Below the pieces are notes generated by a model. That model was not told where the DNA came from. It saw only the letters and a list, made by a program, of their open reading frames with translations, and did not search any database. Of a stretch of DNA of 64,000 nucleotides, positions 1,672 through 40,923 are shown one piece after another (position 1 is the first letter of the stretch; every line of letters begins with the position of its first letter). The position numbers and the translations under genes are program-made. The DNA is taken from the IMG/VR virus record IMGVR_UViG_3300009703_004110, positions 1 through 64,000 of that record. One strand, 5' to 3'.

Positions 1672-1677
1672 GGTTAT

Positions 1678-7458: not shown

Positions 7459-7693
7459 ATTTGAACCTCTACTATGTTTATCTTTATTAGTAAAACCAAT
7501 CAAACCATTTATACTTGACGGAACATCCCTTTGCTGGTTAAAAGCCTGGGACGCGATAGGCTTCCCCCGCCCGTTAAAGGCTCCTGGGGCCCCTCAGCAC
7601 TCCCGTATAATAAAACTAAGGCCCTCGTACTGGAGCGGGATACAAGTCACAGTCAGCGGACCTTACAGGGCCTGCATATCAATGCCAAATTGA

Positions 7694-25866: not shown

Positions 25867-26044
25867 TATTTAACCTCGTTCGTAAAGAAATTAATTGCGT
25901 TATTATGGTATCTAGATGTTCTTTCTTCAAAGTTACAGATATTAAATAACTTTCTTTACCTTGCTTTGTTTTAATACCCATTCGGATGGCATTGCCATCT
26001 TTTTCGATAATCATATAACTATCTGAATTAAGTGTTATTTTCAT
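25850..26044 (-). CDS. Hypothetical protein
   Basis: Start at MKITLN, ATGA-coupled to the lysozyme stop. Confidence 0.6.
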   Translation of the reverse strand: MKITLNSDSYMIIEKDGNAIRMGIKTKQGKESYLISVTLKKEHLDTIITQLISLRTRLNNVEED

Positions 26045-26712
26045 CCGGTCCCGCCCTTCCACATTGCCGCCTCTGCGGCTCTCCTTTTTTGGTGACCAGG
26101 AGAAGAAACAAATGCCACTGGTATTAGATTTCCAGCACCAGTTAAATCGCCTGAATTAATTAACTTCAGAAGTTTTGACCTGGAGATTGTTCCAACTCCA
26201 GTGTTGTATATTATACTAACTAATGCATTAACTTGATTGGTATTTAATGGCGTTGTCACATTTCTCTTAATAAAGCCGAGAACTTTATCCATGTCTTTAG
26301 TCAGATACTGATCGGCCTGTGATTTGGTAATTCTCATTGGACTAGTTTGCCCAACTTTACCGTGCCTATGACCATATCCAATTGCCCACCAACCACCATC
26401 ATCATATGATTCCAATCGAAGGCCTTCAAATTTCTTAATCATATTAGCGCCCTCCTGATCATAAGCGGCTTCCGCATTAGGATCTGGAACTTCTATTATT
26501 TGGCCGATCTGTAATTTAGTCCAATCAAGATCAGGGTTTGCATTCTCAATCATTCTTTGATAAACTGGATTACCACCAGAGATACTCCAGGCCGTATCTC
26601 CCGATTTGATTGTATATGTTTTTGCTGTTTTCAAAAAAGAAAAGAGAAGACGGGCCTCTTTATGAAGCCCCTCTTCTCTTAAATATTGGTATAAACCTTC
26701 TAGCTTTTTCAT
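26041..26712 (-). CDS. Leader + LysM + GH24 lysozyme
   Basis: YTIKSGDT...LQIGQIIEVP (LysM); IKKFEG...YDD...IGYGH and RRAAE (GH24). Confidence 0.92.
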   Translation of the reverse strand: MKKLEGLYQYLREEGLHKEARLLFSFLKTAKTYTIKSGDTAWSISGGNPVYQRMIENANPDLDWTKLQIGQIIEVPDPNAEAAYDQEGANMIKKFEGLRLESYDDGGWWAIGYGHRHGKVGQTSPMRITKSQADQYLTKDMDKVLGFIKRNVTTPLNTNQVNALVSIIYNTGVGTISRSKLLKLINSGDLTGAGNLIPVAFVSSPGHQKRRAAEAAMWKGGTG

Positions 26713-26746: not shown

Positions 26747-29125
26747 TTACATCACTTTTGCAGCAAAAGTTGCTAACTTACTCCTTTCTCCCCTAACTAG
26801 GGTTATATGCCCAGAGCCTTCAAATTCTTTAAATTTGTCAACTACGACGCCCAAGCCAGATGTTTTTATGTTTAATTTATCAGAATCTATCTGGTCCAAA
26901 TCTCCAAGTAATACAATCTTTGAGTTATTGCCCATTCTTGTAATTAAAGCTTTGGCTTCTTTCATATTGATATTCTGAGATTCATCAATAATAAAATAAG
27001 TATTAGGAAGCGTTCGTCCCCTAATATAAGATAATGCTTCGATTTCAATCTGACCTTTCTCGAACATCAGATTGATATAACCACCGCCATGTTTTCCTAA
27101 TAGAACTTTAATATTGTCCATCACAGGCTGTAACCAAGGCAACATCTTTTCTTCTTTGGTTCCAGGCAAAAAGCCGATCTCCTTAGAAGTACTTTCTGCG
27201 GGACGAGATATGATTATCTTTTCATAAGTACCAGCTTGAAGCTCCTGCAAACCTGCAGCAATAGCAAGCAAAGTATTATGTGTTACAATATAATCATCTG
27301 TAATATACAGATGATCTTTGCTGTCGATCATGATGCATTGAGTCTCTTTCTTTGAAAGCTTATCGATTTTATCAATATATTTTCTAAGATTAACAGAACT
27401 CGTTGGACGCCACCTATTAGCCTTTCTTGATAATAAAAATGGACAAAATTCTTTAGAAAGTGAAATGGTTACTCTAAAAGACTCTTTACCTATTTTGGTT
27501 CTTCCTTTGTATTTATAAGTAGTAAATCTACTATTTACAGTTGCTTTGCCACCTAACGAACGAACAATTTCTGCCAAGTCATTTGCAAGCTTGGCAGATG
27601 TACTAGTAAATGTTGATTTTAAACCAGATTTGGTCACTGTGCCGTCTGTATCCATCAAGCCTCTGATTATAGACAATCTATCTCCTACGGATGATAGCTT
27701 ATAATCCTTTGGAATAAACTTATCTTCAGAACCTAAGCCCTGTAATTTAAGCTCAGATAAAAACTCTTTTAGTGGATTTGCAAAATTATTTCTTTTGTTT
27801 CCATCTTTAGTAATCCTATAATCATATTTCGAACCATTTATTTTTGAAATCTTACACCCAATTGACGGTAAGTAATCTGCAAAAAAATCTAAAATTTCAT
27901 TATCTGCCGATGATAAACATGGTGAACCAGATTTTATATATCCGTCTCCAAGTAAACATCCTAATATATATGGATCAATTTTTAACTCTTTAAAATCAAA
28001 CTCTATAGGAGATACAATTGGAATTGAGTGATTTCTTTTTCCATTTTTATTTCTCAAGGATTTTGAAATCTCTTCTAAAGATTTAACTTCACCTTTTCTA
28101 TTATAATCACGATCTCTCTGAGTTCTTGTTAGCCATAAATGTTCTATACATGACTCTGCAGATGTACCATCAGAAAATGTTATCTTATAGACATCCTTTT
28201 TTCCCTGCGGAAATACCCCAATAACATTAGCCATAGATCCGTCCGGTGTTAATACTTTACTTCCAAGCTTAATATCGCCCATTTTAACCCAACCATCTGG
28301 TGTTAAAATTCTCGAATAAAGAGGCTGCGCTTTTCCGCACCCCGCCATGCCAGTTAAGGTCACCATTGAAATACCGGGATCTAATAGCAATTCTAAAGCA
28401 AGAGTTTGCTCTTTATTTCTCGGTCTAATACCCTGAACTTTAAACTTTTTAGTAGAGCCGGCATAATGTAGCTTTCTCCAAATGCCATCTGTCCAGACCC
28501 TTGCTAGAGCGCTTTGCTGCCCTGACTTTAAAATTAAGAATTCATTTGAATAGTAGACGTCATCTAGATCAAATTCTTTCGGATCTATTTCTCCTTCTGC
28601 ATAAAAAGTATCTATAATTGACTCTTCAACCGCTAAGGTATGGACTCCGGTGAACTCACCTTCTTCTCTTTGCGCGATTAAATCTGATATACAGCAACAA
28701 TCAATCTTAAGCGCATCACACTTAACTCGTAAAGCAATATCCTCACTGACCAAGGTTACATTATCAAATACAGCCTTTGACTGCTTGGCTACTGCAATAA
28801 TTCTATTATCGACTATATCCTTCATATTTGGCGGAAGGACTGATAAATCTGATGTTGATATAACAAAGATTCTTGAATTATTTTGGGTAATGACACCCTT
28901 AAAAATACTTCCAGTCTTTCTTAGCGCATCAAGCCTTCTATTTACCTGCCTCGCTGAGGCGCCAGTGACATCTCTATATGTTTTAAGTTTGTCAAGCTCC
29001 TCCAAGACTTCTAGTGGAATATAGATGTCGTGGTCTTGTATGACATCTGTTAGTTCTGGAAACGCTATAAGTGATGAGGTATCAACTACTAAAATAGCCC
29101 TTCCTAATGCTGAGCTTTTACTCAT
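26747..29125 (-). CDS. phoH: PIN-PhoH (PhoH2/YlaK-type) protein, intein-containing
   Basis: PIN VVDTS/VLEELD/DNRI; Walker A GMAGCGK|T; IGFLPG, IRGRT, IIDESQN, TRMG. Confidence 0.93.
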   Translation of the reverse strand: MSKSSALGRAILVVDTSSLIAFPELTDVIQDHDIYIPLEVLEELDKLKTYRDVTGASARQVNRRLDALRKTGSIFKGVITQNNSRIFVISTSDLSVLPPNMKDIVDNRIIAVAKQSKAVFDNVTLVSEDIALRVKCDALKIDCCCISDLIAQREEGEFTGVHTLAVEESIIDTFYAEGEIDPKEFDLDDVYYSNEFLILKSGQQSALARVWTDGIWRKLHYAGSTKKFKVQGIRPRNKEQTLALELLLDPGISMVTLTGMAGCGKAQPLYSRILTPDGWVKMGDIKLGSKVLTPDGSMANVIGVFPQGKKDVYKITFSDGTSAESCIEHLWLTRTQRDRDYNRKGEVKSLEEISKSLRNKNGKRNHSIPIVSPIEFDFKELKIDPYILGCLLGDGYIKSGSPCLSSADNEILDFFADYLPSIGCKISKINGSKYDYRITKDGNKRNNFANPLKEFLSELKLQGLGSEDKFIPKDYKLSSVGDRLSIIRGLMDTDGTVTKSGLKSTFTSTSAKLANDLAEIVRSLGGKATVNSRFTTYKYKGRTKIGKESFRVTISLSKEFCPFLLSRKANRWRPTSSVNLRKYIDKIDKLSKKETQCIMIDSKDHLYITDDYIVTHNTLLAIAAGLQELQAGTYEKIIISRPAESTSKEIGFLPGTKEEKMLPWLQPVMDNIKVLLGKHGGGYINLMFEKGQIEIEALSYIRGRTLPNTYFIIDESQNINMKEAKALITRMGNNSKIVLLGDLDQIDSDKLNIKTSGLGVVVDKFKEFEGSGHITLVRGERSKLATFAAKVM
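27275..28330 (-). mobile_element. Class 3 intein (Ala1) with LAGLIDADG endonuclease, in PhoH Walker A
   Basis: AQPLYS...HLW...GLMDTDG...TQCI...VTHN|T; 352 aa. Confidence 0.9.
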
Positions 29126-29165
29126 GAATGTTATCTCCTAAGGATAGTTTGAATACTTTAACTGG

Positions 29166-29510
29166 TTACTCCATATCAATTTCTTCTTCTATGAAGGTCC
29201 ATGCCTCTATTACTATTTCATAGTATTTTTCGCCTGTTTCTTCCTCTGTTTTTAAAATAAAATCCGGGCCGGCCCATTCGCCTACAGTCTCTTCTTCAAG
29301 ATCTATCCGAAGTGCACTAACGCCCGGATATGTAATGATTTCTATTTTGTACTGCTCTATTAAAAGCTCCACTTGCTCTGGCTGCTCTAGACTAGCTAGC
29401 TCACCCATATCTACGCCAAGAGCTGTCAGAAGGTCATTAAGCCACTCGTGCTTGACCTCCTCAACATCTTGCAGATAACCTGTTCGATTGGCGAGCAGTC
29501 TAATCTCCAT
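29166..29510 (-). CDS. Hypothetical acidic protein
   Basis: 114-aa ORF abutting the RNR stop. Confidence 0.7.
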   Translation of the reverse strand: MEIRLLANRTGYLQDVEEVKHEWLNDLLTALGVDMGELASLEQPEQVELLIEQYKIEIITYPGVSALRIDLEEETVGEWAGPDFILKTEEETGEKYYEIVIEAWTFIEEEIDME

Positions 29511-32500
29511 TTAAAACTCTATAGTGCATGTGGCCCCATCACAAAACTTGTCCTCTTTCTCGTGGACGCTAAAGCTTAAATCAATATCTTTTAGATTGCT
29601 AGATAGTTTCAAGTATTCTTCTCTAGAAATAGTCTCGTAAGGTGCCAATTTATATCCGTGGTCATTCAATGGTAGGAAACTTATGGACTTTAGTCTGGTC
29701 TCATACATAGAAAGTGCTGTAGAAATTTGCTTAGCCTCAGTCTCGTTGAATGTAATTGTGGCAGAAACTTGATTATCAGCCCAGTATCTTTGCATCTGAG
29801 CTACTAACTCTAATTGCTCCCACATACTAGCATCATACTTAGACTTAACAAAATTCTCTATGTAAATAGGAAAGTCAACGACCATAGAGTCTGGTTGATA
29901 AGGGCATGGGTTTACCTGATGTCCTGCCTCAATACATGCCGGAATAATAGGAGAGTCTTTCTGAATTCTAATTCTTCTAATATAGTATTCGCTATGATCA
30001 AAATGAACACCAGGAGAAACACCTGGCAAGAGAGAGACTGTACCACTCGGCTTAACAGATGTCATTTTAATAGAGCGAGGTACGCAAAGCCAGTCGCTAT
30101 ATTTCTTGTCCAATCCTCTAATTCTATCGTATCCACTATCACACCATTCCATATGAGCACGGTACCCAACTTTTGCAATATTATTTTGGATACCAGACTG
30201 AGAGCAACCAATTCTTCTATTACGCATCATTACCGCATTAGTACGTGGGTCGTGCGTTGGAAGTAGTGTGACCGTTTTGGCATATAAATATGCGTACTTA
30301 AGGGTCGCCAGATAATCCTCAAGGCTTTCGTGATTAACAGGGAAGGTCTCGACTAGACAGCATAACTCAAAGCTCTCTAGCGTTTGCTCAGAACAGTTGT
30401 GAACAATAATTCCATTTGCCCCAAATCTATGTACTTCATCAATAGTACAATCATATACCTTTTCAATACCAATATAAGTAACCGACTCTACTTCTGCAAC
30501 AAATCTTTCTCTATTTAGAGTTCGTCTATAATCATTCATTCTAAGTCGTAATTTATCATTTCTTTCCATTTCATCAAAATTAATCTGTAATAAAAAGTGT
30601 GATAAATTATCATTACTAATTACTAATTCATGCATAGCATTACATTCATATAGTTTATATCCACTTTTTCCATCTGGTAGCAACCGCTTTCCAGCTTCGC
30701 GCCTATTTCTATAAACTGTTGAATTAACTCCAAAATTAAGTAACATTTTTTGAATAATTAATAAATGCTGCTCGTTTGCTAATCCTATTCTAACCGAAAG
30801 TCCCTTGGTTTGAGTGCCCTGAACTGAGCCATCTGCATCAAAAAAGCCACGTAAAAACCCTGCTTGAAATTTAGATGATGTACATAATAAGGTGCTTTCA
30901 TTTATTATATTTTTTTCATGATCAATTCCATAATCTATTGCTTTTTCCCAAAGTTGCCGACTTTTAATTGAGACCATATCTTTTGAATCTATATTACACC
31001 CATTTCTATTAGAGTGATACCTAGGATCTCCCCCCAAGGTCTTTGTTCTTTCTATAGCAAGATTAAGCATATCATTTTTTGTAGATCCCCAATATTGCAA
31101 AATTCCTGATTTTTGCTCTTTATGAAAATATCCATCTCCTAGCAAGCCACCCAATAACCATCCTTCATTAAATGAGCCATCGCCTTCCCAGCTAATAAGA
31201 TTATTTTCATTATATCTTGTGTCATTTAATATCAACTTATCACCAGCATCTAAATCACCAGCTTCTACCCATAATTCATATCGCTTTTTTCTTGTAATTT
31301 TTGGAGCAGTTAATATCTTGTGATCTTCGGTTACTTTAATAGAATGTCCTTCTTTTGTTTTAACCAAATATACTGGCTTTGTTCCTGTTTCAAAAACACC
31401 GGTTTTACAGTTATATTTTTTTCCATTGACTATAGCTATAAATGGTTTATCAAGCATTTCATCTGCTCTAACAGGTCCTTCTTCTGTAAAAATTAAGGTA
31501 TCTCCGGTAATACATGGGTTGGCACCCTCTGCTCTCCTATCTTTCCAGTTAGGTGGCTCCATCATACGACCGTAAGCTCTAGCGTTATGAAGCCACATAA
31601 ATCCAGGCTCGCCATTTACTTTGATCATATCAGCAAACTTAGAATAATCTATCCCAATTTCTGCAAAAATAGAATTATTAGAGGCCCAACGACGATCTTC
31701 TAAGGCTTCTTTGTTAAGTTTTAAAGATCTAAACTCTTTATCTTCGGGAGATCCGAACATAATTTCGGCAATTCTGCGCACATTACCTGCAACAACACAT
31801 TTGCCGACATAATTAAAGATGTCCACAATTTGTGTTGAATTAATCTCATAAGGTGTGAACTCTTGTATCTCAATAGAAAAAGATAAAGGCTCTGGGCGTT
31901 CTGTTTCTGACATAACTGTAGTAGGTGTAATTTTAGTATCGTTTGGTACCAAAACAGAGATTATATTCTCATGCAAATTTCTTAATGGGCCGGCACCAGA
32001 CGCAGTTCCACCGAATCCTCTAATTGGGGCTCCGTATGGTCTAATTTTAGAATAATTAAAAACTGGAATAGAGCCTCTTCCGACAAAGGCATCCAATAGA
32101 ACTCTAACAGATTCTACCCAGCCTTCTCTTGTGTCAGGGATTACCCATTCCGCCTGTGCCATTTTCGGTGTTTTAATAGTAACAAGGCCGGCACCTTTTA
32201 CATCTCCACCGACACCAACTCCAAGCATTGACATATCCATAAGAAACGTAAATGGTGAGGCAAAGTCTGATGAAATATCCTTAGTACTTGTGAAAGCGCA
32301 ATTATTTAAAGCAGCACTTCCCATTTTCCATATTTGAGGAACCCCCATCATCCAAAGTCCGCGTCCTGGTGGAAGAAATTTAAACTCCCACATTCTAGTA
32401 AACATTTCTTGAGCACTTCTTTGTGATTTATGAGCATTCCAAGGCAGCCTTAGTCTTTCACAGTGTGACCTCTGAATATTATAAACACCTTCAACAACTC

Positions 32501-32675
32501 TTTGGCAAGTTTGCCAAAATTCTTCGGTTCTCCCGGACTCTTCATCAATTACTCTAGCGTAAGTTCGCTTATAAGTAACATATCCGAGCGGGCCCCACTT
32601 CGGTTGCTGGTCTATAAAGTTCGACATGAACTTGGTAGACAGCTTAAACGGGTTCGCTGGAAAAGACAGCATCAT
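29511..32675 (-). CDS. nrdJ: Class II (AdoCbl-dependent, monomeric RTPR-type) ribonucleotide reductase, intein-containing
   Basis: PPGRGLW, ALNNC, GNVRR, GANP|C.E, VKPSGT, C-terminal CDGATC. Confidence 0.93.
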   Translation of the reverse strand: MMLSFPANPFKLSTKFMSNFIDQQPKWGPLGYVTYKRTYARVIDEESGRTEEFWQTCQRVVEGVYNIQRSHCERLRLPWNAHKSQRSAQEMFTRMWEFKFLPPGRGLWMMGVPQIWKMGSAALNNCAFTSTKDISSDFASPFTFLMDMSMLGVGVGGDVKGAGLVTIKTPKMAQAEWVIPDTREGWVESVRVLLDAFVGRGSIPVFNYSKIRPYGAPIRGFGGTASGAGPLRNLHENIISVLVPNDTKITPTTVMSETERPEPLSFSIEIQEFTPYEINSTQIVDIFNYVGKCVVAGNVRRIAEIMFGSPEDKEFRSLKLNKEALEDRRWASNNSIFAEIGIDYSKFADMIKVNGEPGFMWLHNARAYGRMMEPPNWKDRRAEGANPCITGDTLIFTEEGPVRADEMLDKPFIAIVNGKKYNCKTGVFETGTKPVYLVKTKEGHSIKVTEDHKILTAPKITRKKRYELWVEAGDLDAGDKLILNDTRYNENNLISWEGDGSFNEGWLLGGLLGDGYFHKEQKSGILQYWGSTKNDMLNLAIERTKTLGGDPRYHSNRNGCNIDSKDMVSIKSRQLWEKAIDYGIDHEKNIINESTLLCTSSKFQAGFLRGFFDADGSVQGTQTKGLSVRIGLANEQHLLIIQKMLLNFGVNSTVYRNRREAGKRLLPDGKSGYKLYECNAMHELVISNDNLSHFLLQINFDEMERNDKLRLRMNDYRRTLNRERFVAEVESVTYIGIEKVYDCTIDEVHRFGANGIIVHNCSEQTLESFELCCLVETFPVNHESLEDYLATLKYAYLYAKTVTLLPTHDPRTNAVMMRNRRIGCSQSGIQNNIAKVGYRAHMEWCDSGYDRIRGLDKKYSDWLCVPRSIKMTSVKPSGTVSLLPGVSPGVHFDHSEYYIRRIRIQKDSPIIPACIEAGHQVNPCPYQPDSMVVDFPIYIENFVKSKYDASMWEQLELVAQMQRYWADNQVSATITFNETEAKQISTALSMYETRLKSISFLPLNDHGYKLAPYETISREEYLKLSSNLKDIDLSFSVHEKEDKFCDGATCTIEF
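30396..31514 (-). mobile_element. Intein with LAGLIDADG endonuclease, directly before the RNR catalytic Cys
   Basis: NP|CITGDT...GFFDADG...IIVHN|CSEQ; 373 aa. Confidence 0.93.
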
Positions 32676-33198
32676 TAGCCTCCATATAATCTTTTACTTT
32701 TTGTATTGATCTCTTTTTTAGAATACGCACACGCTCGACAGACACGTTCAGCTCTTGGCTTATTGAGGTTAGAGTGTGCTCTTCGAGTAAAGACATGTAT
32801 AATATTTTTTGTTCTCTATTCGAAAGCATTTTGCAACTTAAAACCTCTTTTACCAGCACAACATTTTCCTGCCATTTTACATTCAAACCGCTAAGATTAA
32901 TAGACTTCAGTGGTCTGTATTTTTTCTGAAAGTCTCTACTTGCATTAGCAAAATGCCAGTTGGACCATCGGTAAAAGTCAAAATGTCTATGGCAGTCAAA
33001 AGTTTTAATGGAGGTCCAGAGGGCCAAGTTAAATTCCTGCTCCAAATCCTCCACATGAGAAAAACTTCTAAATTTTTTTATTCTACTAATAACAAGTGGA
33101 CGCAGTTTCAAAAACAGATCTGCCTGCCATTTACTAGAAGTACCGTTAGCGTTGTCTGAGAATATGCTATGAACCTCATGATTACTCAAGAGAGACAT
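32644..33198 (-). CDS. Sigma70-family sigma factor (regions 2 and 4)
   Basis: EDLEQE..LALW.SIKTFD (region 2); LSNREQKIL...TLTSISQELNVSVERVR (region 4); start at MSLLSN. Confidence 0.85.
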   Translation of the reverse strand: MSLLSNHEVHSIFSDNANGTSSKWQADLFLKLRPLVISRIKKFRSFSHVEDLEQEFNLALWTSIKTFDCHRHFDFYRWSNWHFANASRDFQKKYRPLKSINLSGLNVKWQENVVLVKEVLSCKMLSNREQKILYMSLLEEHTLTSISQELNVSVERVRILKKRSIQKVKDYMEANDAVFSSEPV

Positions 33199-33199
33199 T

Positions 33200-33751
33200 T
33201 TATTCCTTATCTTCGCCTTGTCTGTATTGCTCAGTGAACGCGCCATCCTTCCACATTCGGACAGTTAGTGTTTCTTCTGACAATGTAAATGTCGCAACCA
33301 CATCATCCCGTACAGAGAATGAGGCCGCAGATATATGTCTCGTGCCGCTTCCTTCCGGTATTTCTAAGGATGGCTCTTCAACGGTTAGATATATTCCAGT
33401 GCCAAGAATTTGGCCATTATGATTAATTACAATGGCACCGTCATCTCCGCTTTCAAAAATCTTATCCACCTCTTGATCAAATTGTCCAAAAGCAACATTC
33501 ATATACTTTTGAATTAGATTCTTGCCAAGCTGGCGCATACCAGGTACGGCGTGATCATGATATCTATCAAAGGCTCCTAGGACCACTAAAACCCCGATGC
33601 GCTTTCCTTTCTTTTGCAAATTATCAGCTAGAGAGCACATCAAGGAATATATTTTCTTTTCCGATCGCTCTCTTGCCATGTTAAATTGATATGAGTAATC
33701 TACGTGTGGTTCTTTACGAACTGTTACATTTGTTTCAGCAGATTCAGCCAT
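33200..33751 (-). CDS. Stand-alone diadenylate cyclase (DAC/DisA_N) domain protein
   Basis: DGA motif (DDGAIVI), GTRHISAA, LSEET. Confidence 0.85.
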   Translation of the reverse strand: MAESAETNVTVRKEPHVDYSYQFNMARERSEKKIYSLMCSLADNLQKKGKRIGVLVVLGAFDRYHDHAVPGMRQLGKNLIQKYMNVAFGQFDQEVDKIFESGDDGAIVINHNGQILGTGIYLTVEEPSLEIPEGSGTRHISAASFSVRDDVVATFTLSEETLTVRMWKDGAFTEQYRQGEDKE

Positions 33752-33762
33752 GATATCTCCAA

Positions 33763-35205
33763 TTACTTTTTAAAGGTTACGTTATACTTTTCGTCCTCTT
33801 CATCATCTTGTATGCTGAGACCAAGCTCATCATAAGTATAATGAATTGTCTCACCTTCATTATCGACAGTTTCTAGGTTTATAATCCCTGGCCAGATATC
33901 ATGTATATACTCTAATACATTTTCAACGTGCTTAGGATCTAACGTACCAATTTGTCCACTCTTGTGCTCTAGCTCGATGCCCATAGCGGAGGCCTTACTT
34001 ATTGCGATAATGGGGGCACGGTAGTTGTAAATACCCCTTGCTATATATTCTACCACGTCCTCTACATCCGTACTTTTAATTTGTATGATTTTCTCTTTTG
34101 CTCGGTTGTAACCCTGCTTATAGACGAACATCTTAAGCTTGTCGACAATGGCCTGTGTCAGATAATTTCTCAAGAAGGAAATATCGTCTTCATCTTCTAC
34201 TATCTGAAGTATTTTTTGCAGCCCCGTTACGTCTGAGCTGCCTGCTTTATACATTCTATCCCATCGCTCTCTAACGTCATTTAAGATGGTGAAGCCCAAA
34301 AAGTATGGATTTATATTAAGCTTATTGCTACCTGGTTGAACAACACGTTCATGAATCTTGACAAACTCAAGATACTCGTGTGGAGATAATTCATCATCAG
34401 AAAGCAGATACATTAATTCTGCATGAATGAAGCTGGCAAAACCTTCATTCACAATCTTAGTGCAGTACTGAGGATAGAAGTAAAAGGACTCTTCTCTGAT
34501 GATCTCAAATATATCTCTTTCCCATGGTTCTAAATTGGCATAATTGGCGAAGAACCAAAGAAGGTCCTCTTCTGGTCGCGGAGGAAACTGGTCATTCTCA
34601 ACCACCTGCTTAAAAGAAGGCTCCTTGTCAAGCCCGAACATATCGTCAAACTCGTTCTCTTTTCTTTTTTTCCAGACTTTCTTTCGACCCTCATATGGCT
34701 TTCTATGTATATCTCTCTTCCAGTTAATATTTTTGTCCATAGCAAATGCTGTGTCCATAATTCTTTCAACTGTATCAAGACCATACTTTGTAATATATTC
34801 CTCTACTCTGGCTGCTCGCTCTGCTGCATGATAGACCATCTTGCGATCTGTTTTCTTAAACAAATAGTTGTTCTTAAAGAAGTGCACGTGCCCTATGACG
34901 TGAGCAATAACCATTGTATTTGCGATGTTACTGTTAGATTCGAGCAAGAATGCATAGGAAGGGTCATTGTTGAGCACAAGCTCATAAACCTTAGACATGC
35001 CCATCTCACCCTGAGTCTTCTGATACTCATAACTTTGACCATAAGACCAGTGACGAGCCCTAGTGGGAAGACCATAGCTCATAATTTCTAGCATTACTTC
35101 TTCCGGTACAACTTCCCACATAATCGGGAAGAAATCTAACCCAAGATCCTTCTCGGCCGTTTCTTCGAACATTTTGGTTCGTCTGGCTAAAACTTCATTC
35201 ATCAT
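33763..35205 (-). CDS. spoVR: SpoVR/YcgB family protein
   Basis: HWSYG, YELVLNNDP, AHVIGHVHFFKNN, TKIVNEG, NPYFLG. Confidence 0.93.
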   Translation of the reverse strand: MMNEVLARRTKMFEETAEKDLGLDFFPIMWEVVPEEVMLEIMSYGLPTRARHWSYGQSYEYQKTQGEMGMSKVYELVLNNDPSYAFLLESNSNIANTMVIAHVIGHVHFFKNNYLFKKTDRKMVYHAAERAARVEEYITKYGLDTVERIMDTAFAMDKNINWKRDIHRKPYEGRKKVWKKRKENEFDDMFGLDKEPSFKQVVENDQFPPRPEEDLLWFFANYANLEPWERDIFEIIREESFYFYPQYCTKIVNEGFASFIHAELMYLLSDDELSPHEYLEFVKIHERVVQPGSNKLNINPYFLGFTILNDVRERWDRMYKAGSSDVTGLQKILQIVEDEDDISFLRNYLTQAIVDKLKMFVYKQGYNRAKEKIIQIKSTDVEDVVEYIARGIYNYRAPIIAISKASAMGIELEHKSGQIGTLDPKHVENVLEYIHDIWPGIINLETVDNEGETIHYTYDELGLSIQDDEEDEKYNVTFKK

Positions 35206-35704
35206 CTAGCTCCTCATCAAATAGGTCAAGGAAGTCCTTGGTTGACATATTTCTTGTCTCATCTAAAAATGTATCAAAATCTGCACCGCCACGTATCTTG
35301 GTACCACTATATATAATCCTATCTAAAGATTTTGGTACTGGTACGCCATTAGAGTTGGGACTTAATGACGTGTATTGCATCTTCTTATTAAAGACATCCA
35401 TGTGGTAGATCAATTCATTACGAATATAATCTGGGCACTCATCAAAAACCTCTTCAAATGGTATAGTGACATATCTTATCGACGCTCTTGCACTATTTCT
35501 CAAAGCTTTTCTGCCAACAGCGGTAGATTTATCTACCTTATGAGGCCCAGGCGCCCTTCCAACGACCTTTTTCTTCCATATAGCTCCATCTCTTCTGATG
35601 GTTACAATGAAACCTGTATGCTTTAAGGTGAATTCTCCTCTTTCCAGAGAGATTGGAGTTAATAGCCCTGTTTTAAAAGCCTTTTTAACTGCCTCAGACA
35701 TCAT
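35195..35704 (-). CDS. Hypothetical protein with FEEV..LxYHMD motif
   Basis: IPFEEVFDECPDYIRNELIYHMDVF; lies between yeaH-like and spoVR. Confidence 0.7.
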   Translation of the reverse strand: MMSEAVKKAFKTGLLTPISLERGEFTLKHTGFIVTIRRDGAIWKKKVVGRAPGPHKVDKSTAVGRKALRNSARASIRYVTIPFEEVFDECPDYIRNELIYHMDVFNKKMQYTSLSPNSNGVPVPKSLDRIIYSGTKIRGGADFDTFLDETRNMSTKDFLDLFDEELDDE

Positions 35705-36915
35705 GACTTTACTTTTCTTCTTCGCTTCCTAACAACTCGTTTCTTTTTATTAGAAACATCATCTATATTGAAGAACTTTTTAAGAGCGTCAAAAACATCA
35801 TCACGTTCTTGAAGTCTAAGTGTAACATACCTAGTTCTGGTGATGCCTTTATCTAAGATATCTGATAGTCTATCATGATTATTAAACCATGCACTTTCTC
35901 GTTCTACATTTGGAATTATCTCTCCGTATCCTATTGCCCTACACATAGGAAGAAGTCTTTTGACATATTCTAGGCAAATATTATTATCATTTCCCCAGTT
36001 ATCACCATCACTGAACTCAATTAAATAGTTATTCCATCTATCTGGCGGATGATGTGATGACATATGTTCATAAGCAAGCTTAAAGGCTGAGCTGCACTGA
36101 GTTCCCCCCGAAGAGTTAATGGAGAAGAACCTTTGCTCGGTTTCAATCCAGGCCTTAGAATCATGGGCTATAAAGACTATATCTATTTTTTTGTATCGTC
36201 TTCTTAAGAATTGAACCATCCAAAAGAAAAAGCTTTTTGCGATGTGCGTCTTCTCTTCACCCATAGATCCTGAACGATCCATTAGAAGATAAACAGCGGC
36301 ATTAGAATGGTATTCTTTAGTAACGTCCCACTCTCTGTACCTAAAGTCATCTTGGTGAAACTCACCTACTTTGGCATCGCCTTTAGCGGCGTTTCTAATC
36401 AGGTTCTGTATTAGAGTTCTTTTGATATCAAGATTTGGCATAATGCCTTTTTTCTCAATAGAGGAAAACTCTTCTAATTCTGACTCAATCTGGGTCGCAC
36501 CTTTTGGCTCCATCCACGGTAAATCTAATTCTTCCAGGAGAATATCGACCACTTCGTTGATTGACACTTCTGCATCGTAATACTTTTCCCCATCTTCATT
36601 ACCGGCGCCTTGGCCCTTACCTTGTTGACTCGGACCTTTGCCTATCTTATATTTATCGCCCTTTTTGCCATCAAGACCTTGTCCAACCTCCTGGTTGTCT
36701 TTAATTCTGCCATATTTAAACCTATATCTGTCAAGATACTTTACCGGTACTTTAATTTTCTTATCGCCATCGGATCGTATGACATCATATTCTGTGATCA
36801 GGTCTTTACCATTTTTACGAATAGCGCGCTTAACCAGCTCTTTATGTCGAGCTGAGTCTCGCTTACCTCGTCTTTTCAACTTCCATATATCAGAAAGGCT
36901 ATCATACTTTGGCAT
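35701..36915 (-). CDS. yeaH: YeaH/YhbH (DUF444) vWA-domain protein
   Basis: D..RH, LELP-like LDLP, MDRSGSM (MIDAS), SGGTQCSSA, SDGDNW. Confidence 0.92.
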   Translation of the reverse strand: MPKYDSLSDIWKLKRRGKRDSARHKELVKRAIRKNGKDLITEYDVIRSDGDKKIKVPVKYLDRYRFKYGRIKDNQEVGQGLDGKKGDKYKIGKGPSQQGKGQGAGNEDGEKYYDAEVSINEVVDILLEELDLPWMEPKGATQIESELEEFSSIEKKGIMPNLDIKRTLIQNLIRNAAKGDAKVGEFHQDDFRYREWDVTKEYHSNAAVYLLMDRSGSMGEEKTHIAKSFFFWMVQFLRRRYKKIDIVFIAHDSKAWIETEQRFFSINSSGGTQCSSAFKLAYEHMSSHHPPDRWNNYLIEFSDGDNWGNDNNICLEYVKRLLPMCRAIGYGEIIPNVERESAWFNNHDRLSDILDKGITRTRYVTLRLQERDDVFDALKKFFNIDDVSNKKKRVVRKRRRKVKS

Positions 36916-36917
36916 TA

Positions 36918-38822
36918 TTAGTTCCGTGCCATTAGAGAGCTAACGTAACGTAGAAGCTGGTTGGCGCTTGCCGCTGTGTATCCATGCTTTTCGCATAAGA
37001 CTTCTACTACTCCATTAACTCTTTTTAGCTCATTAGCATCAGGGTTTCTAGAACTTACGGTCAATCTAATTACATCCTGTCTCTCATCAAAAAGCTGCTT
37101 CTCTAAAGCCTCACGGAGATGTGGGTGATCTTGGTAGCGATATTCGCCATGATTTTTGAGGGAGCGAAGCATTTTTCTATAGATCTCTTGGCGGAAAGAG
37201 GTTTTGCCATTTTCAGATATCTGAATCTTCTCCTCAACGGAGCGCATTAGTCTCTCATCTGGCTCAGCAGGATTGCCCCACTCATCTTCTAGCTCAGTTC
37301 CATCTAGGAAAGCCTCCACTTGCTCTAGGTAATTCTTCAGAAGATTGCCGATTTCCTGTTCGAAGTTAACAAAGAAAGCCTTCTGAACGTCGTTACGGGC
37401 CATCTTGTTGTACTCTTCAATAATTAGAACCAATAAGGCCTCCAGCCTTTCAGTTTCAGCTCTGTCAATCTTGGGATTAGATTCAAACCCGTCCCTCAAT
37501 GATCTTACGATATCGATTGGAGTAACGAAGGTCTTGCCGTTAGCCAGTTCGGATGAGATACGATTGATTACATATCTCGGTGAAATACCTGACATTCCTT
37601 CGCTAGCGAATTCGCCCTTGAACTTACCGCTCTCTGAAACAGTAAAGCCTTCTACTTCCTCACCGTTGTAAAGCCTCATTTTGTTCAGTAGGGTTAGTCC
37701 TTGATTTGAAGATGTCTTTAGGCGAGATAGAACCGCCAACATTGCGGCACACTTTAGGGTATGCGGTGCAAGATGCCTCTCTCCAAAGTTTGCCTGCGAG
37801 ATTAGCTTCTCATAAATCTTGACCTCTTCGTCAACCTGAAGATTATATGGAACTCTTACCACGATTGTTCTGTCATGAAGCGCTTCCATTTCATCTTTTG
37901 CCAAGAATCGGTTATATTCTGTCTCATTAGTGTGAGCTAAAATGAACTCGTCTGCATAAATTAATGGAAATCTTCCAGTCTTAATGTTCTTTTCTTGTGC
38001 TAAGGTTAGAAGAACATACAAGAACTTCTGATCAACCTTTAGCATCTCTACGAACTCCATCATTCCTCGGTTGGCTACATTTAACTCTCCGTCAAATCTG
38101 TAGGCTCTAGGGTCTGATTCTGCTCCATAAGTCCCAATAGTACTCAGATCTAATGAGCCAACTAATTCGGAGATATCTTGGCTCTTCTTATCTGATGGTA
38201 CAAAGGTTCCGATGCAAGCTCGGTCTAATTCTGAAATAAAGACTCTGCGCACTGGCATAGAGAGGAAGTCACCGTCATATTTCTCTTTCAGGTGCAATGC
38301 CATGAGCGGGCTCAATTGGCCTTGTATATTTACGCCGTATCGGTCTTTGAAAGTTTGTCGTAACTCGACTGGGATGGCCGTTAACGGATCTTCGTACATT
38401 GGTGAATCTTCTAAGGCGTAAAGTGCGCCGGCGTCTGTTTTGGAGTAGGCCTCCAATCCTCTTTTTAGCAAAATAGCCAACTGTGATTTACCCGATGATG
38501 TTGGTCCGTAAAGTAGTAATATTCTTCGGCCAACTTCACTCCCAGCCGCGGCAGCTCTAAGATAAGACATAATATGTTCAATTGGAACATCAATACCAAA
38601 CAAATCTTCTTCAAAGAAATTATAGCTGGTTATATTACCATCATCATCTTTTTCAACACCATGAGATTCAATCATCTCTAAAACTCTCTGGTGTGCGTTT
38701 TTATGAAGGCCTGGATTTTCAGTAATTAACTGAACATAATCCTTTAAAGTTCCTTCCCATGCTGTTACGTCGTTATGTTCGACGTGACTTTGCAATAATT
38801 CAAATAGTTCAGTCTCAGCCAT
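36918..38822 (-). CDS. prkA: PrkA/YeaG AAA+ serine kinase family protein
   Basis: LLYGPTSSGKS, SDPRAYRFDGELNVANRGMMEFVEMLK, GISPRYV; start at MAETE. Confidence 0.95.
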   Translation of the reverse strand: MAETELFELLQSHVEHNDVTAWEGTLKDYVQLITENPGLHKNAHQRVLEMIESHGVEKDDDGNITSYNFFEEDLFGIDVPIEHIMSYLRAAAAGSEVGRRILLLYGPTSSGKSQLAILLKRGLEAYSKTDAGALYALEDSPMYEDPLTAIPVELRQTFKDRYGVNIQGQLSPLMALHLKEKYDGDFLSMPVRRVFISELDRACIGTFVPSDKKSQDISELVGSLDLSTIGTYGAESDPRAYRFDGELNVANRGMMEFVEMLKVDQKFLYVLLTLAQEKNIKTGRFPLIYADEFILAHTNETEYNRFLAKDEMEALHDRTIVVRVPYNLQVDEEVKIYEKLISQANFGERHLAPHTLKCAAMLAVLSRLKTSSNQGLTLLNKMRLYNGEEVEGFTVSESGKFKGEFASEGMSGISPRYVINRISSELANGKTFVTPIDIVRSLRDGFESNPKIDRAETERLEALLVLIIEEYNKMARNDVQKAFFVNFEQEIGNLLKNYLEQVEAFLDGTELEDEWGNPAEPDERLMRSVEEKIQISENGKTSFRQEIYRKMLRSLKNHGEYRYQDHPHLREALEKQLFDERQDVIRLTVSSRNPDANELKRVNGVVEVLCEKHGYTAASANQLLRYVSSLMARN

Positions 38823-38823
38823 T

Positions 38824-39120
38824 CTATCTCCGATATTTGTATGGATTTGGCGTATCGCCATATATAGAGTCTATAGTGTTTTGGTTGCCAGCCTTTATTT
38901 TGTCTACAGTTTTTCTAACGCCTTCTTTGATTTCGTCGATTATCTCGGAAGAATCTTTGTCGACTTTATTGGAAATACTGCCTAGCTTATGAAATAGTAC
39001 CCCGTTCTCGCACTGCGAACACTCTTTTTTTTCTTTCTTCTTTTTCACGAACTCAGATATGGTCATGTTCTGAGTGCCTATAAAATCACATTCTGAGCAT
39101 CCAAAAGTATATTTAGGCAT
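38824..39120 (-). CDS. FmdB-like zinc ribbon protein
   Basis: MPKYTFGCSEC...CSQC. Confidence 0.8.
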   Translation of the reverse strand: MPKYTFGCSECDFIGTQNMTISEFVKKKKEKKECSQCENGVLFHKLGSISNKVDKDSSEIIDEIKEGVRKTVDKIKAGNQNTIDSIYGDTPNPYKYRR

Positions 39121-39301
39121 CGTCTTCTTCGTCCACAAAGATCATATCCGTACCCTCAACTTTTAGATTGCCAGATAGTGATAAATCCCTAAGTAATTGC
39201 TTTTTAAACTTTGGATCAGTAATTAAAATTGTTACCTCTAAATCCTTAGTATCAGGACGAAAAGATAAATTTTTAATTTTCCCAATAACTTTCTTCTTCA
39301 T
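39113..39301 (-). CDS. Hypothetical protein
   Basis: 62-aa ORF overlapping both neighbours. Confidence 0.65.
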   Translation of the reverse strand: MKKKVIGKIKNLSFRPDTKDLEVTILITDPKFKKQLLRDLSLSGNLKVEGTDMIFVDEEDDA

Positions 39302-39575
39302 TAAAAGCCTTCTCCAATGCTGCGATTATATCTTTGTGTTTTAGTCCAACTAAATACATTAAGTTATCGACTTCGTTCTTTGTTATCCTATTATACCCAA
39401 TTATTTTTGTTCTTGGTATGGAAATTCTTCCGATCAATTCAGTAATAAGCTCGGGTTGATCAAATTTAAACAGAGGCAATACCTCAACGTGACTTTTCTT
39501 ATTGGACAAAACGATTGCGATGAACTTAGTATCTTCAAGTTCGATGCTGACAAATTCGTGTTTATCAAACGTCAT
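39273..39575 (-). CDS. Hypothetical protein
   Basis: Start probably MTFDKH, overlapping the DnaB stop. Confidence 0.6.
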   Translation of the reverse strand: MTFDKHEFVSIELEDTKFIAIVLSNKKSHVEVLPLFKFDQPELITELIGRISIPRTKIIGYNRITKNEVDNLMYLVGLKHKDIIAALEKAFNEEESYWEN

Positions 39576-40923
39576 TTTCATCACCAATTTCTTCTGCCCA
39601 GTCATCAGGCACACTCAAAATTCTGGATTTTGTAAAGTCTTTAAGCAAAGAGAGCTTGCCCTTTTTGCCGTCCCTATTTTTAACAACATGGACCGCCATA
39701 TCCTCCCTAAGGTGCTCTTCATCTCGTTTTTCGATTAGCAAAACAATGTTGGCATTATCACCAATCATCTTAGAACGAGCCAAATCCTCCAGATCGTTGC
39801 CAGGGTCTTTTGCGTTCTTATTTCTTGCCTTCCTCTGTGATGCAGTAATTACTGGAACATCTTTTGCTCTCGCAAACTCAGCCATATTTTCAGCAATATA
39901 CCCTAGATCCAGCCAGTCAGAATTATTTATGCTGTTTGGCTTCATAATTCCAAGATAGTCTATGCACACTAGGTCTGGCTTGAATTCTGCTATAATAGTA
40001 TCATACCTGGCCTCTATATCTGTCATCTTTGAGCCACGAGGCATGTCACAGATGTATAGGGTCTTATCGTATTTACTCTGAAAGGTAAGCGTGCTTCTCC
40101 ATCTTTCTTTCTCTTGAGCAGTAAGCATTCCTCTAACAAGATGCTTATGTTCCATTCCAGATATGCAAGCGTCTATTCTCTGCTCGGTCTGTGCTTTGGA
40201 CATCTCTAAAGTGAAGTAAAGAATATTGGCGCCATCCTTTTTGACTGGGGCGCCATGCAGAGGGTTGTTAGTTCCCAGCCAAGCATTTATTCCTATATTT
40301 AGCATCAGCATTGACTTACCAGATGACGATGGTCCTGCAATAATCATTAGCTCTTGCTTTTTGATACCCCAAATATATTCGTCAACTTCGCGATAGCCTG
40401 TCAAGACACCAGAGACTTCTCCCGGATTTGCCTCAACATACTTATAAGCTTCCAGCCTATCTTTTGCGGAATCTGCGAAGTTTCCTTCTGCAAATACTGC
40501 GCTTCTTTTCATTCTTTCAATTTTGGCACCGATTCTCAAAACTTCAGTTTCAAAATCTTCAGCGTCAAATTCGTCTTCATCGACTGAAACAGATTCTGCC
40601 AAAGCTCTAGCTAAGAACGCTTGGTATCTTTTTTTGATTTCATCGACGTGAAATCCGACCTCTGCCTCTACACACGTAGATTCTCTAATGACTCCTATAA
40701 GTTCAATGTGATCAATATCATCTAATAAACTTTCTTCCATTAATTCGAAAGTAGGAGGAGACCTGTATCTTTTAAAATAATCTCTTACGGTCCTAGCAAT
40801 GGGCTTATAATTTGGCAACATTGCTTCGATCAATAAATTAGTATCGATCATTCTTGAGACTTGATTGAACTCAATCGGACCCTTCATCATATAATTGATG
40901 ACCTTTCTTTCTCTCAAGGACAT
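39565..40923 (-). CDS. dnaB: Replicative DnaB-like helicase
   Basis: GPSSSGKS, FTLEM, CIDYLGIM, TASQ, KNRDG. Confidence 0.93.
   Translation of the reverse strand: MSLRERKVINYMMKGPIEFNQVSRMIDTNLLIEAMLPNYKPIARTVRDYFKRYRSPPTFELMEESLLDDIDHIELIGVIRESTCVEAEVGFHVDEIKKRYQAFLARALAESVSVDEDEFDAEDFETEVLRIGAKIERMKRSAVFAEGNFADSAKDRLEAYKYVEANPGEVSGVLTGYREVDEYIWGIKKQELMIIAGPSSSGKSMLMLNIGINAWLGTNNPLHGAPVKKDGANILYFTLEMSKAQTEQRIDACISGMEHKHLVRGMLTAQEKERWRSTLTFQSKYDKTLYICDMPRGSKMTDIEARYDTIIAEFKPDLVCIDYLGIMKPNSINNSDWLDLGYIAENMAEFARAKDVPVITASQRKARNKNAKDPGNDLEDLARSKMIGDNANIVLLIEKRDEEHLREDMAVHVVKNRDGKKGKLSLLKDFTKSRILSVPDDWAEEIGDENDV

What the first reader, a model, noticed from the sequence alone, without database searches (positions are those of the whole stretch)
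33200..33751. Stand-alone phage diadenylate cyclase domain with RHI in place of RHR
Seen: a 183-aa DAC domain with intact DGA but GTRHIS, and no TM, HhH or other regulatory domain. Established: DGA and RHR are the DAC catalytic motifs. Inference: an unregulated c-di-AMP source, a variant-dinucleotide synthase that interferes with nucleotide-signalled immunity, or a dominant-negative partner for a host DAC.
Basis: partly seen in the sequence, partly recalled or inferred. Interest (0 to 1): 0.6.

Follow-up and report, generated by a model that had tools for sequence, protein, structure and literature searches.

The report
Jumbo-phage stand-alone diadenylate cyclase
A 330-kb marine jumbo phage carries a small, strongly conserved c-di-AMP synthase gene directly after its PrkA-YeaH-SpoVR stress genes, and its odd 'RHI' motif is a normal variant also found in proven archaeal cyclases, not a sign of a broken enzyme.

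Summary
Window 33200-33751(-) encodes a 183-aa protein with one DAC domain (Pfam 47.6 bits, cut-off 27), a confident DAC fold, DGA, GTRHIS, and no TM or HhH domain.

The RHI interpretation is weakened:
- RH[I/L] is fixed in 118 of 120 homologues, and all three Ile codons are used.
- Deeper orthologues in the same gene module carry RHK.
- All 120 haloarchaeal DacZ proteins retrieved carry RHM or RHL, never RHR. H. volcanii DacZ is a proven cyclase.
- Published mutagenesis shows only the first Arg to be essential, and it is invariant here, as are D104, H139, S158, E159 and E160; Y121 is nearly invariant.

The gene belongs to a clade of short stand-alone DACs, separate from DacZ/CdaZ (100/100 support). 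Wherever context was available it lies on phage contigs.

In the RHI family it always follows SpoVR in a PrkA-DUF444-SpoVR-DAC operon. It is usually coupled to a sigma-factor gene (stop, 1 nt, ATG).

Most likely it is an active c-di-AMP synthase used for host takeover. The host and the targets are unknown. No paper found describes it. Interest is moderate.

The parts
33200..33751 (-). Stand-alone diadenylate cyclase (DAC) gene, 183 aa: N-terminal arm and helix (residues 1-48) plus DAC domain (48-171). Motifs: D104-G105-A106, Y121-L122, T137-R138-H139-I140, S158-E159-E160.
33757..33760 (-). Shine-Dalgarno GGAG, with 5 nt (33752-33756) between it and the DAC start codon. The SpoVR stop codon TAA is at 33763-33765.
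   Evidence: read directly from the sequence
33763..35205 (-). SpoVR-family gene (480 aa), immediately upstream of the DAC gene (11-nt gap).
   Evidence: Pfam SpoVR 1.8e-105; adjacency kept in all RHI-family loci
35195..35704 (-). 169-aa ORF of unknown function between DUF444 and SpoVR. It is present only in the closer relatives.
   Evidence: no confident family
35701..36915 (-). DUF444 / YeaH-YhbH-like gene (404 aa).
   Evidence: Pfam DUF444 3e-85
36918..38861 (-). PrkA / YeaG-like AAA+ protein gene (647 aa), first gene of the module.
   Evidence: Pfam AAA_PrkA 7.2e-115 and PrkA 1.4e-65
32644..33198 (-). Sigma-70-family factor gene (184 aa from the ATG at 33198; regions 2 and 4). Its start lies 1 nt after the DAC stop codon (TAA-A-ATG).
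   Evidence: the same arrangement in 11 of 16 related loci
29511..32675 (-). Class II ribonucleotide reductase gene with a LAGLIDADG intein, next gene downstream in the conserved order.

Best explanation
The ORF encodes a catalytically competent minimal diadenylate cyclase. It belongs to a phage-borne clade of short stand-alone DAC proteins. This is a sister lineage to the DacZ/CdaZ-type cyclases that has lost, or never had, the N-terminal pyruvate-kinase-like domain.

In this lineage of 300-400-kb marine jumbo phages it is fixed as the gene directly after SpoVR in a co-directional, tightly packed PrkA-DUF444(YeaH)-SpoVR-DAC operon. It is usually translationally coupled to a phage sigma-factor gene.

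SHOWN: DAC fold; invariance of the catalytic Asp, the first Arg and the His of the RHR motif, and the Ser-Glu-Glu metal/phosphate site, and near-invariance of the adenine-stacking Tyr; purifying selection on Ile140; fixed gene order.

SUPPORTED BY A MODEL: a homodimer held by the conserved N-terminal arm.

INFERRED: during infection the protein condenses two ATP into c-di-AMP. This raises the level of a messenger that in many bacteria controls potassium and osmolyte transport and envelope homeostasis, so the phage can hold the host's turgor and stress state, alongside the PrkA/YeaH/SpoVR stress proteins and its own sigma factor, through a long jumbo-phage cycle. A phage DHH-DHHA1 phosphoesterase elsewhere in the genome may degrade the signal.

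Ile at the third motif position is a tolerated lineage variant, as Met is in DacZ, not a loss of function.
For: Domain and fold:
- Pfam DAC 47.6 bits, cut-off 27. AF2 pLDDT 85.4. All top Foldseek PDB hits are DACs at probability 1.0.

Catalytic residues:
- D104, G105, A106, R138, H139, S158, E159 and E160 are invariant in 120 of 120 homologues. Y121, T137 and I140 are at least 90% conserved.
- These columns align with DGA, the Tyr, GTRH and SEET of solved CdaA chains.

The Ile:
- GTRHIS in 113 of 120. Ile is coded by ATT, ATA and ATC in different orthologues, while flanking codons vary synonymously.
- Deeper orthologues in the same module have RHK (L034, L035).
- The sister group carries RHK, RHR, RHL and RHM.

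Tolerance of a non-Arg third residue:
- P0196 scores 426.5 bits on the haloarchaeal DacZ equivalog (cut-off 430). All 120 of its homologues, many named DacZ by NCBI, have RHM (119) or RHL (1).
- H. volcanii DacZ makes c-di-AMP in vitro and in vivo (PMC6741144).
- Thermococcus and Bathyarchaeota DacZ-type proteins carry RHI.
- Mutagenesis implicates the first Arg (DacM R143A, bioRxiv 10.1101/2022.03.11.483894; Leptospira CdaA R203A, PMC12974146) and the whole motif (Mtb DacA RHR->AAA, PMC3328451). The third residue alone has not been tested.

Operon:
- PrkA-DUF444-SpoVR-DAC order in every related locus with enough flank.
- SD before the DAC gene and TAA-A-ATG into the sigma gene. No excess of promoter-like or terminator-like sites inside the cluster.

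Dimer:
- Score 0.57 against a best control of 0.02. The mark was reached by 20 of 30 proteins solved as pairs of one chain and by 1 of 23 solved as single chains.
- The runs agree in at least 90% of contacts, and partner pLDDT is at least 84.
- My own alignment was used and ATP/Mn rode along, so the counts hold only roughly. The interface uses the family-specific conserved residues 14-29 and 60-74.

DHH-DHHA1 gene:
- Present in G000 and in 3 of 3 complete DAC-bearing relatives. Absent from RsoM2USA, which has the PrkA triad but no DAC.
- A second, unrelated large phage has a DAC and a DHH gene 5.6 kb apart.
Against: - There is no biochemical evidence for any member of this clade.
- The third motif residue lost its positive charge relative to the RHK/RHR forms, and its individual role has not been measured.
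- The predicted dimer interface is not the head-to-head active-site contact that catalysis needs, so a higher oligomer would have to form.
- The host is unknown. If it is a proteobacterium it may lack c-di-AMP receptors.
- The phage encodes no recognisable c-di-AMP riboswitch, PstA/DarA, RCK_C or CBS receptor.
- The DHH-DHHA1 protein could equally be a nanoRNase or a RecJ-like enzyme.
- Its co-occurrence with the DAC in related phages may only reflect a shared core genome.
Confidence: 0.55

Rival explanations
1. Non-catalytic DAC-fold protein. It would bind ATP or c-di-AMP as a regulator or sponge, or poison a host DAC by forming mixed oligomers.
For: The basic third residue seen in the deeper orthologues (RHK) was replaced by Ile and then fixed. 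The predicted homodimer interface lies away from the active site. Tight coupling to a sigma-factor gene would also fit a regulatory binding protein.
Against: The catalytic Asp, the metal-binding Glu, the phosphate-binding Ser and the first Arg are invariant in 120 of 120. A mere binder or poison subunit would not need them all. Identity to CdaA is only 22-24%, and the dimer arm is family-specific, so mixed oligomers with a host CdaA or DisA are unlikely. DacZ enzymes work with a hydrophobic third residue (PMC6741144).
Confidence: 0.2
2. Active cyclase with a different product: another cyclic dinucleotide, a linear pppApA-type product, or use of ADP. The product would be made to interfere with nucleotide-signalled immunity.
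For: Some DACs accept ADP (Mtb DacA, PMC3328451; DacM, bioRxiv 10.1101/2022.03.11.483894).
Against: The adenine-stacking Tyr and the following Leu (Y121-L122) and the ribose-contacting first Arg are conserved. The same third-position variation occurs in DacZ, which makes c-di-AMP (PMC6741144). There are no matches to defence or CD-NTase families.
Confidence: 0.1
3. The product is c-di-AMP, but the purpose is conflict with defence or with other phages rather than physiology. Examples: desensitising or prematurely triggering c-di-AMP-sensing effectors (SAVED-type), or excluding superinfecting phages.
For: A TIR-SAVED effector in Haloferax senses DacZ-made c-di-AMP, and viral infection raises c-di-AMP there (bioRxiv 10.1101/2025.06.19.660554).
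Against: Making an immune trigger would harm the phage. There is no defence or anti-defence family nearby. The fixed partners are stress-response proteins (PrkA, YeaH, SpoVR), not counter-defence genes.
Confidence: 0.1

Closest known systems
DacZ / CdaZ(DacY)-type diadenylate cyclases of archaea and some bacteria (e.g. Haloferax volcanii DacZ, NCBIfam NF041371)
   Same: This is the best-scoring named family for the DAC domain (42.8 bits, against 19 or less for CdaM, CdaS and DisA). The third residue of the RHR motif is non-basic (RHM in haloarchaea, RHI in Thermococcus). DGA, the first Arg and the His are kept.
   Different: DacZ is about 270 aa and has an N-terminal pyruvate-kinase-C-like domain (PF19294), which is absent here. 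The score is far below the cut-off (430). The phage clade separates from the DacZ type with 100/100 support. Its signature is GxGTRHIS / LSEET rather than GLGxRHxAA / LDGAF.
CdaA/DacA catalytic domain (L. monocytogenes, B. subtilis, S. aureus structures)
   Same: Same fold (Foldseek probability 1.0, target TM about 0.6-0.65). DGA, Tyr, GTRH and SEET align.
   Different: No three-helix membrane anchor. 22-24% identity. RHI instead of RHR. A family-specific N-terminal arm is predicted to mediate dimerisation.
CdaS (sporulation-specific DAC with N-terminal autoinhibitory helices)
   Same: Small soluble DAC with an N-terminal helical extension. Structural match to 2fb5 (rmsd 3.1 A over 146 columns). 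Thematic link to sporulation-type neighbours (SpoVR, PrkA).
   Different: NF038328 scores only 14.4 bits (cut-off 225). There is one long helix rather than the two-helix YojJ-type domain. It is found in phages, not Bacillus.
Phage-borne PrkA-YeaH-SpoVR triads (e.g. Ralstonia jumbo phage RsoM2USA, PMC8504454)
   Same: The same three genes in the same order on a jumbo phage.
   Different: In RsoM2USA no annotated ORF of DAC size follows SpoVR. No phage in the INPHARED collection matched this DAC by tblastn at E<=1e-3. RsoM2USA also has no DHHA1 gene. The DAC addition is specific to the uncultured marine lineage.

Membership tests
DAC domain (Pfam PF02457, diadenylate cyclase superfamily) | Profile match above the curated cut-off | tested here: met
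   47.6 bits against a cut-off of 27, residues 48-171; 47.8 bits in the genome scan
DAC domain (Pfam PF02457, diadenylate cyclase superfamily) | Mixed alpha/beta DAC fold | tested here: met
   AF2 pLDDT 85.4; the top 50 Foldseek PDB hits are all DACs, probability 1.0
DAC domain (Pfam PF02457, diadenylate cyclase superfamily) | DGA motif (catalytic Asp) | tested here: met
   D104-G105-A106, invariant in 120 of 120
DAC domain (Pfam PF02457, diadenylate cyclase superfamily) | RHR motif | tested here: inconclusive
   R138 and H139 are invariant; the third residue is Ile. The third Arg is also absent from all 120 haloarchaeal DacZ proteins retrieved, so it does not define the superfamily.
DAC domain (Pfam PF02457, diadenylate cyclase superfamily) | Metal/phosphate site Ser-Glu-Glu and adenine-stacking Tyr | tested here: met
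   S158-E159-E160 invariant, Y121 at least 90% conserved; both align to SEET and the Tyr of CdaA
DAC domain (Pfam PF02457, diadenylate cyclase superfamily) | Head-to-head oligomer and synthesis of c-di-AMP from ATP | not testable with these tools
   A homodimer is predicted (0.57 against control 0.02) but through the N-terminal arm, not the active-site faces. The product needs biochemistry.
DisA class | C-terminal helical linker and HhH DNA-binding domain, about 360 aa | tested here: not met
   183 aa with no further domain; PRK13482 12.3 bits against a cut-off of 201
CdaA/DacA and CdaM classes | N-terminal transmembrane helices (three in CdaA, one in CdaM) | tested here: not met
   No hydrophobic segment of TM length in residues 1-47 (read from the translation). 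CdaM 19.2 bits against a cut-off of 225. TIGR00159 not reported at E<=1.
DacZ / CdaZ class | N-terminal pyruvate-kinase-C-like domain (PF19294) before the DAC domain; equivalog score | tested here: not met
   Only positions 121-260 of the 270-position model are matched, 42.8 bits against a cut-off of 430. Separate clade with 100/100 support.

The most novel reading that the evidence does not exclude
These jumbo phages carry a self-contained, virus-encoded c-di-AMP circuit. It would consist of a minimal cyclase (this gene), a phage DHH-DHHA1 phosphodiesterase, and phage-encoded effectors: the PrkA/YeaH/SpoVR proteins and/or the translationally coupled sigma factor would act as the c-di-AMP-responsive output. 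The phage would then import a second-messenger system into hosts that may lack it, and use it to time its own gene expression or to force a dormancy-like host state.
Probability: 0.1. Interest if true: 0.8.

Novelty: new variant of a known kind. Interest (0 to 1): 0.5.

Why it matters
c-di-AMP is known as a cellular messenger of bacteria and archaea. The paper searches run here found no description of a virus-encoded diadenylate cyclase. No cultured phage in the INPHARED collection has this gene.

This clade is widespread in ocean metagenomes, including Tara mesopelagic samples (213 homologues at E<=1e-3). It would be the sixth architectural type of DAC and the smallest: an N-terminal arm plus the catalytic domain.

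Its fixed position after SpoVR gives a testable handle on two poorly understood things. One is what the conserved PrkA/YeaG-YeaH-SpoVR/YcgB stress triad does. The other is why jumbo phages carry it.

The work also corrects a textbook shortcut. The second Arg of 'RHR' is not a universal DAC feature, because the haloarchaeal DacZ lineage retrieved here has RHM or RHL.

Tried and rejected
Searches that found nothing:
- tblastn of the DAC and megablast of the 8-kb region against 50,697 GenBank phages: no match.
- Pattern scan of 185,579 species genomes with the family alignment: no relative. The patterns required RHI, so only this family is excluded.
- Host identification failed. There are no tRNAs in the window. 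NCBI-sourced family members carry no organism names. A scan with the phage SOD-like protein found nothing.
- PADLOC: no defence-family match for the DAC, SpoVR, DUF444 or the 169-aa ORF. Only weak partial hits for the sigma factor and PrkA.
- PHROGs: no family for the DAC.
- Phage-encoded c-di-AMP riboswitch (RF00379), PstA/DarA (PF06153), RCK_C (PF02080) and CBS (PF00571): none in the 332-kb record.
- Promoter and terminator scan of 29000-41500: counts near shuffled expectation, no internal signal singled out.

Steps that could not be done:
I did not pursue it by any other route.
- I did not obtain the H. volcanii DacZ sequence itself. The RHM statement rests on 120 haloarchaeal homologues, including NCBI-named DacZ proteins and a Haloferacaceae member.
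- No CdaA or DisA sequences were available as files, so the tree has no such outgroup and is midpoint-rooted only.

Ideas rejected:
- A DisA-like DNA-scanning role: no HhH domain.
- A fragment or fusion with SpoVR: the gene has its own SD and start, and SpoVR has a TAA stop.
- A provirus in a 58% GC host as a clue to the host: the flank looks phage-like, not chromosomal.

Full report
**Observation**

The ORF reported at 33200-33751 exists, but on the minus strand; the plus-strand frame is closed by many stops. It begins with ATG at 33751. A GGAG lies at 33757-33760, 5 nt before the ATG. The gene starts 11 nt after the TAA stop of the upstream SpoVR gene and ends with TAA at 33202-33200.

The 183-aa product has one Pfam domain, DAC (PF02457), at residues 48-171 (E 1.5e-12, 47.6 bits, cut-off 27). 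PHROGs and PADLOC give nothing for it.

The AlphaFold2 model built on 120 homologues is confident (pLDDT 85.4, pTM 0.82). Its best PDB matches are exclusively diadenylate cyclases: CdaA/DacA, CdaM/DacM, DisA and CdaS, at probability 1.0.

HMMER alignments to solved CdaA chains line up these motifs:
- D104-G105-A106 with DGA.
- Y121-L122 with the adenine-stacking Tyr-Leu.
- G136-T137-R138-H139-I140 with GTRHR.
- S158-E159-E160-T161 with SEET.

**What the window is**

The window is the first 64 kb of a 332,270-bp IMG/VR record rated 99% complete. A relative with a 73% identical DAC is a 335,169-bp record with direct terminal repeats. This is therefore a jumbo phage of about 330 kb.

**The family**

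The word-based search found 213 proteins of about 180-190 aa at 50-82% identity. All carry PF02457, and many sit on contigs of 120-420 kb from marine metagenomes, including Tara.

In the 120 best:
- DGA is present in all 120.
- R138, H139, S158, E159 and E160 are invariant.
- Y121, T137 and I140 are at least 90% conserved.
- The motif reads GTRHIS in 113, GTRHIT in 4 and GTRHLT in 1. The remaining two still read RHI.

Across orthologous loci the Ile is encoded by ATT (8), ATA (5) and ATC (2), while the neighbouring Arg and Ser codons vary synonymously. The Ile is therefore held by selection on the protein.

The N-terminal stretch is also conserved (D18, F19, S20, Q22, R27, E31, K32, F35, L38, C39). 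It is not a disordered leader.

**Is RHI an anomaly?**

No. A profile search of 1.84 billion cluster representatives gave only 530 hits at E<=1e-3.
- The nearest are other short (about 170-210 aa) stand-alone DACs whose third motif residue is I, L, M, K, R or H.
- The next tier is the DacZ/CdaZ type (260-450 aa; GLGxRHxAA). There the position is hypervariable: A, V, I, L, M, T, S, Q, N, E, Y and rarely R.
- Named members of that tier include Thermococcus 'diadenylate cyclase' and a Bathyarchaeota protein, both RHI.
- One representative, P0196, scores 426.5 bits over the full length of NCBI's haloarchaeal DacZ equivalog, whose cut-off is 430.
- All 120 of its closest homologues, many named DacZ by NCBI, carry RHM (119) or RHL (1).

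DacZ of Haloferax volcanii is a demonstrated Mn-dependent c-di-AMP synthase and is essential in vivo (PMC6741144).

The mutagenesis I could find tests only the whole motif or the first Arg:
- Whole motif: RHR->AAA in M. tuberculosis DacA (PMC3328451).
- First Arg: R143A in DacM, where that Arg contacts the ribose (bioRxiv 10.1101/2022.03.11.483894).
- First Arg: R203A in Leptospira CdaA (PMC12974146).

The first Arg and the His are invariant here.

**Phylogeny**

A maximum-likelihood tree of 62 DAC domains was built (midpoint-rooted, with no CdaA or DisA outgroup available).
- The short stand-alone proteins separate from the DacZ/CdaZ type with 100/100 support.
- The RHI family is recovered as a clade (99/95).
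- Its sister group contains RHK, RHR, RHL and RHM forms.

Two deep orthologues, L034 (42% identity) and L035 (P0128), sit in the same SpoVR...DAC-sigma module and have RHK. The likely history is therefore a basic residue replaced by Ile; AAA to ATA is a single change. The Ile was then fixed in the marine lineage.

**Context**

In the window the minus strand reads as follows:

| Gene | Coordinates |
|---|---|
| DnaB | 39565-40923 |
| PrkA | 36918-38861 |
| DUF444/YeaH | 35701-36915 |
| 169-aa ORF | 35195-35704 |
| SpoVR | 33763-35205 |
| DAC | 33200-33751 |
| sigma factor | 32644-33198 |
| class II RNR with intein | 29511-32675 |
| 114-aa ORF | 29166-29510 |
| PhoH with intein | 26747-29125 |
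| lysozyme | 26041-26712 |

Gaps between genes range from -11 to +11 nt. Promoter-like and terminator-like sites inside the cluster are no more frequent than in shuffles.

The order PrkA-DUF444-SpoVR-DAC holds in every related locus with enough flank: 24 loci from JGI, ENA/Tara, Logan, NCBI and IMG/VR.
- In the RHI family the DAC gene follows SpoVR at -8 to +77 nt.
- A sigma-factor gene follows the DAC directly in 11 of 16 loci examined. Its start overlaps or abuts the DAC stop; here the junction is TAA-A-ATG.

DAC identity among these phages (42-82%) is similar to that of PrkA (57-85%), DUF444 (47-81%) and SpoVR (48-77%).

The cultured Ralstonia jumbo phage RsoM2USA has the triad, but no ORF of DAC size follows its SpoVR (PMC8504454), and no INPHARED phage matched this DAC. 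The family was also not found in 185,579 species genomes by pattern scan.

Other members of the short clade lie on phage-like contigs without the triad:
- L036, next to an amidase gene.
- L039, a 152-kb contig with RNR, PhoH and Rad52 genes.

One member, P0140, sits beside an aconitase gene and may be cellular.

**Oligomer**

A homodimer prediction with ATP and Mn riding along scored 0.57 against a best control of 0.02.
- The mark was reached by 20 of 30 proteins solved as pairs of one chain and by 1 of 23 solved as single chains.
- The runs agree in at least 90% of contacts, and partner pLDDT is at least 84.
- My own alignment and the ligands make these counts only rough.

The interface uses residues 14-29, 60-74, 80-90 and 108-123. 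That includes the family-specific conserved arm (D18, F19, S20) and the G71-M72-R73 loop, not the active-site faces. This resembles the stable non-catalytic dimers of CdaA catalytic domains. It implies that catalysis would need dimers to meet head to head. That last step is inference.

**Other c-di-AMP parts in the phage**

No c-di-AMP riboswitch, PstA/DarA, RCK_C or CBS domain is encoded in the 332-kb record.

There is one stand-alone DHH-DHHA1 protein (277 aa; G000 229647-230480, minus strand) beside an adenylosuccinate-synthetase-like gene.
- Its DHH and GGGH motifs are intact.
- Its best PDB sequence match is a NrnA-like protein.
- Orthologues occur in all three complete DAC-bearing relatives searched, and none in RsoM2USA.
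- The unrelated large phage contig L039 also has a DHH gene 5.6 kb from its DAC.

This is a lead for a make-and-break pair, not a demonstration.

**Mechanism**

The evidence best fits an active minimal c-di-AMP synthase expressed as part of the phage PrkA-YeaH-SpoVR(-sigma) operon.
- Shown: fold, catalytic residue set, purifying selection, operon position.
- Model-supported: the arm-mediated dimer.
- Inferred: c-di-AMP synthesis; action on host c-di-AMP receptors for potassium and osmolyte transport and envelope homeostasis (established for Firmicutes, Actinobacteria, cyanobacteria and haloarchaea); a role alongside the stress triad in holding the host in a favourable state.

The host is unknown, which is the main weakness.

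Rivals are a non-catalytic binder or poison subunit, a variant product, and a role in immune conflict. On the last, c-di-AMP is sensed by a TIR-SAVED effector in Haloferax (bioRxiv 10.1101/2025.06.19.660554).

**Novelty**

Automated pipelines already label these proteins 'DisA with diadenylate cyclase activity'. I found no paper describing a phage-encoded DAC or its link to the PrkA triad.

It is a new architectural and ecological variant of a known enzyme family, not a new kind of system. The RHI feature that prompted the finding is ordinary once the DacZ-type enzymes are considered.

**Limits**

- No outgroup-rooted tree.
- The H. volcanii sequence itself was not inspected.

Noticed in passing
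window 1-2400 (continues in L014:12000-20528): There is a sharp switch from about 39% GC, which holds for the other 330 kb, to 55-63% GC. The same junction appears in an ENA 420.5-kb contig, the JGI 391-kb contig and a Logan contig, possibly from the same reads. The GC-rich side holds short ORFans, one PHROG family (phrog_7111) and a 151-aa L7/L12-like ORF, so it looks like another phage or mobile element rather than a bacterial chromosome. IMG/VR's 'provirus' label is therefore doubtful. The region may be a chimera, an island or an integration site.
   Followed up: partly
G000 229647-230480 (-), outside the window (L037:1495-2328): A stand-alone DHH-DHHA1 phosphoesterase (277 aa) lies beside an adenylosuccinate-synthetase-like gene. 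Orthologues occur in 3 of 3 complete DAC-bearing relatives, and it is absent from RsoM2USA. It could be a c-di-AMP/pApA phosphodiesterase or a nanoRNase.
   Followed up: partly
window 29511-32675 (-) and 26747-29125 (-): LAGLIDADG-type inteins interrupt the class II ribonucleotide reductase and PhoH genes. In relatives the intein sits elsewhere: SpoVR carries one in L002, L020, L029 and L033, while their RNR or PhoH genes are uninterrupted. Inteins therefore move among genes of this module.
   Followed up: no
window 35195-35704 (-): A 169-aa ORF with no confident family (weak GTP_CH_N hit, 19.6 bits, below cut-off) is inserted between DUF444 and SpoVR. It is present only in the closer relatives (45-47% identity) and absent from L004 and L005.
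   Followed up: no
window 6760-7503 (-): A phage-encoded Fe/Mn superoxide-dismutase C-terminal domain protein (Sod_Fe_C, 47 bits). NUDIX, an IscA-like Fe-S assembly gene and an RNase-H-like gene lie nearby.
   Followed up: no
L039 (JGI 3300033121, 152-kb contig): A different large phage carries a short RHI-type DAC with no PrkA/SpoVR genes in the 7 kb shown on either side. Nearby are HIRAN, Smr, PhoH, Rad52, ClpB-like, DHH and IMPDH genes. Stand-alone DACs have therefore spread among large phages beyond the PrkA-module lineage.
   Followed up: partly
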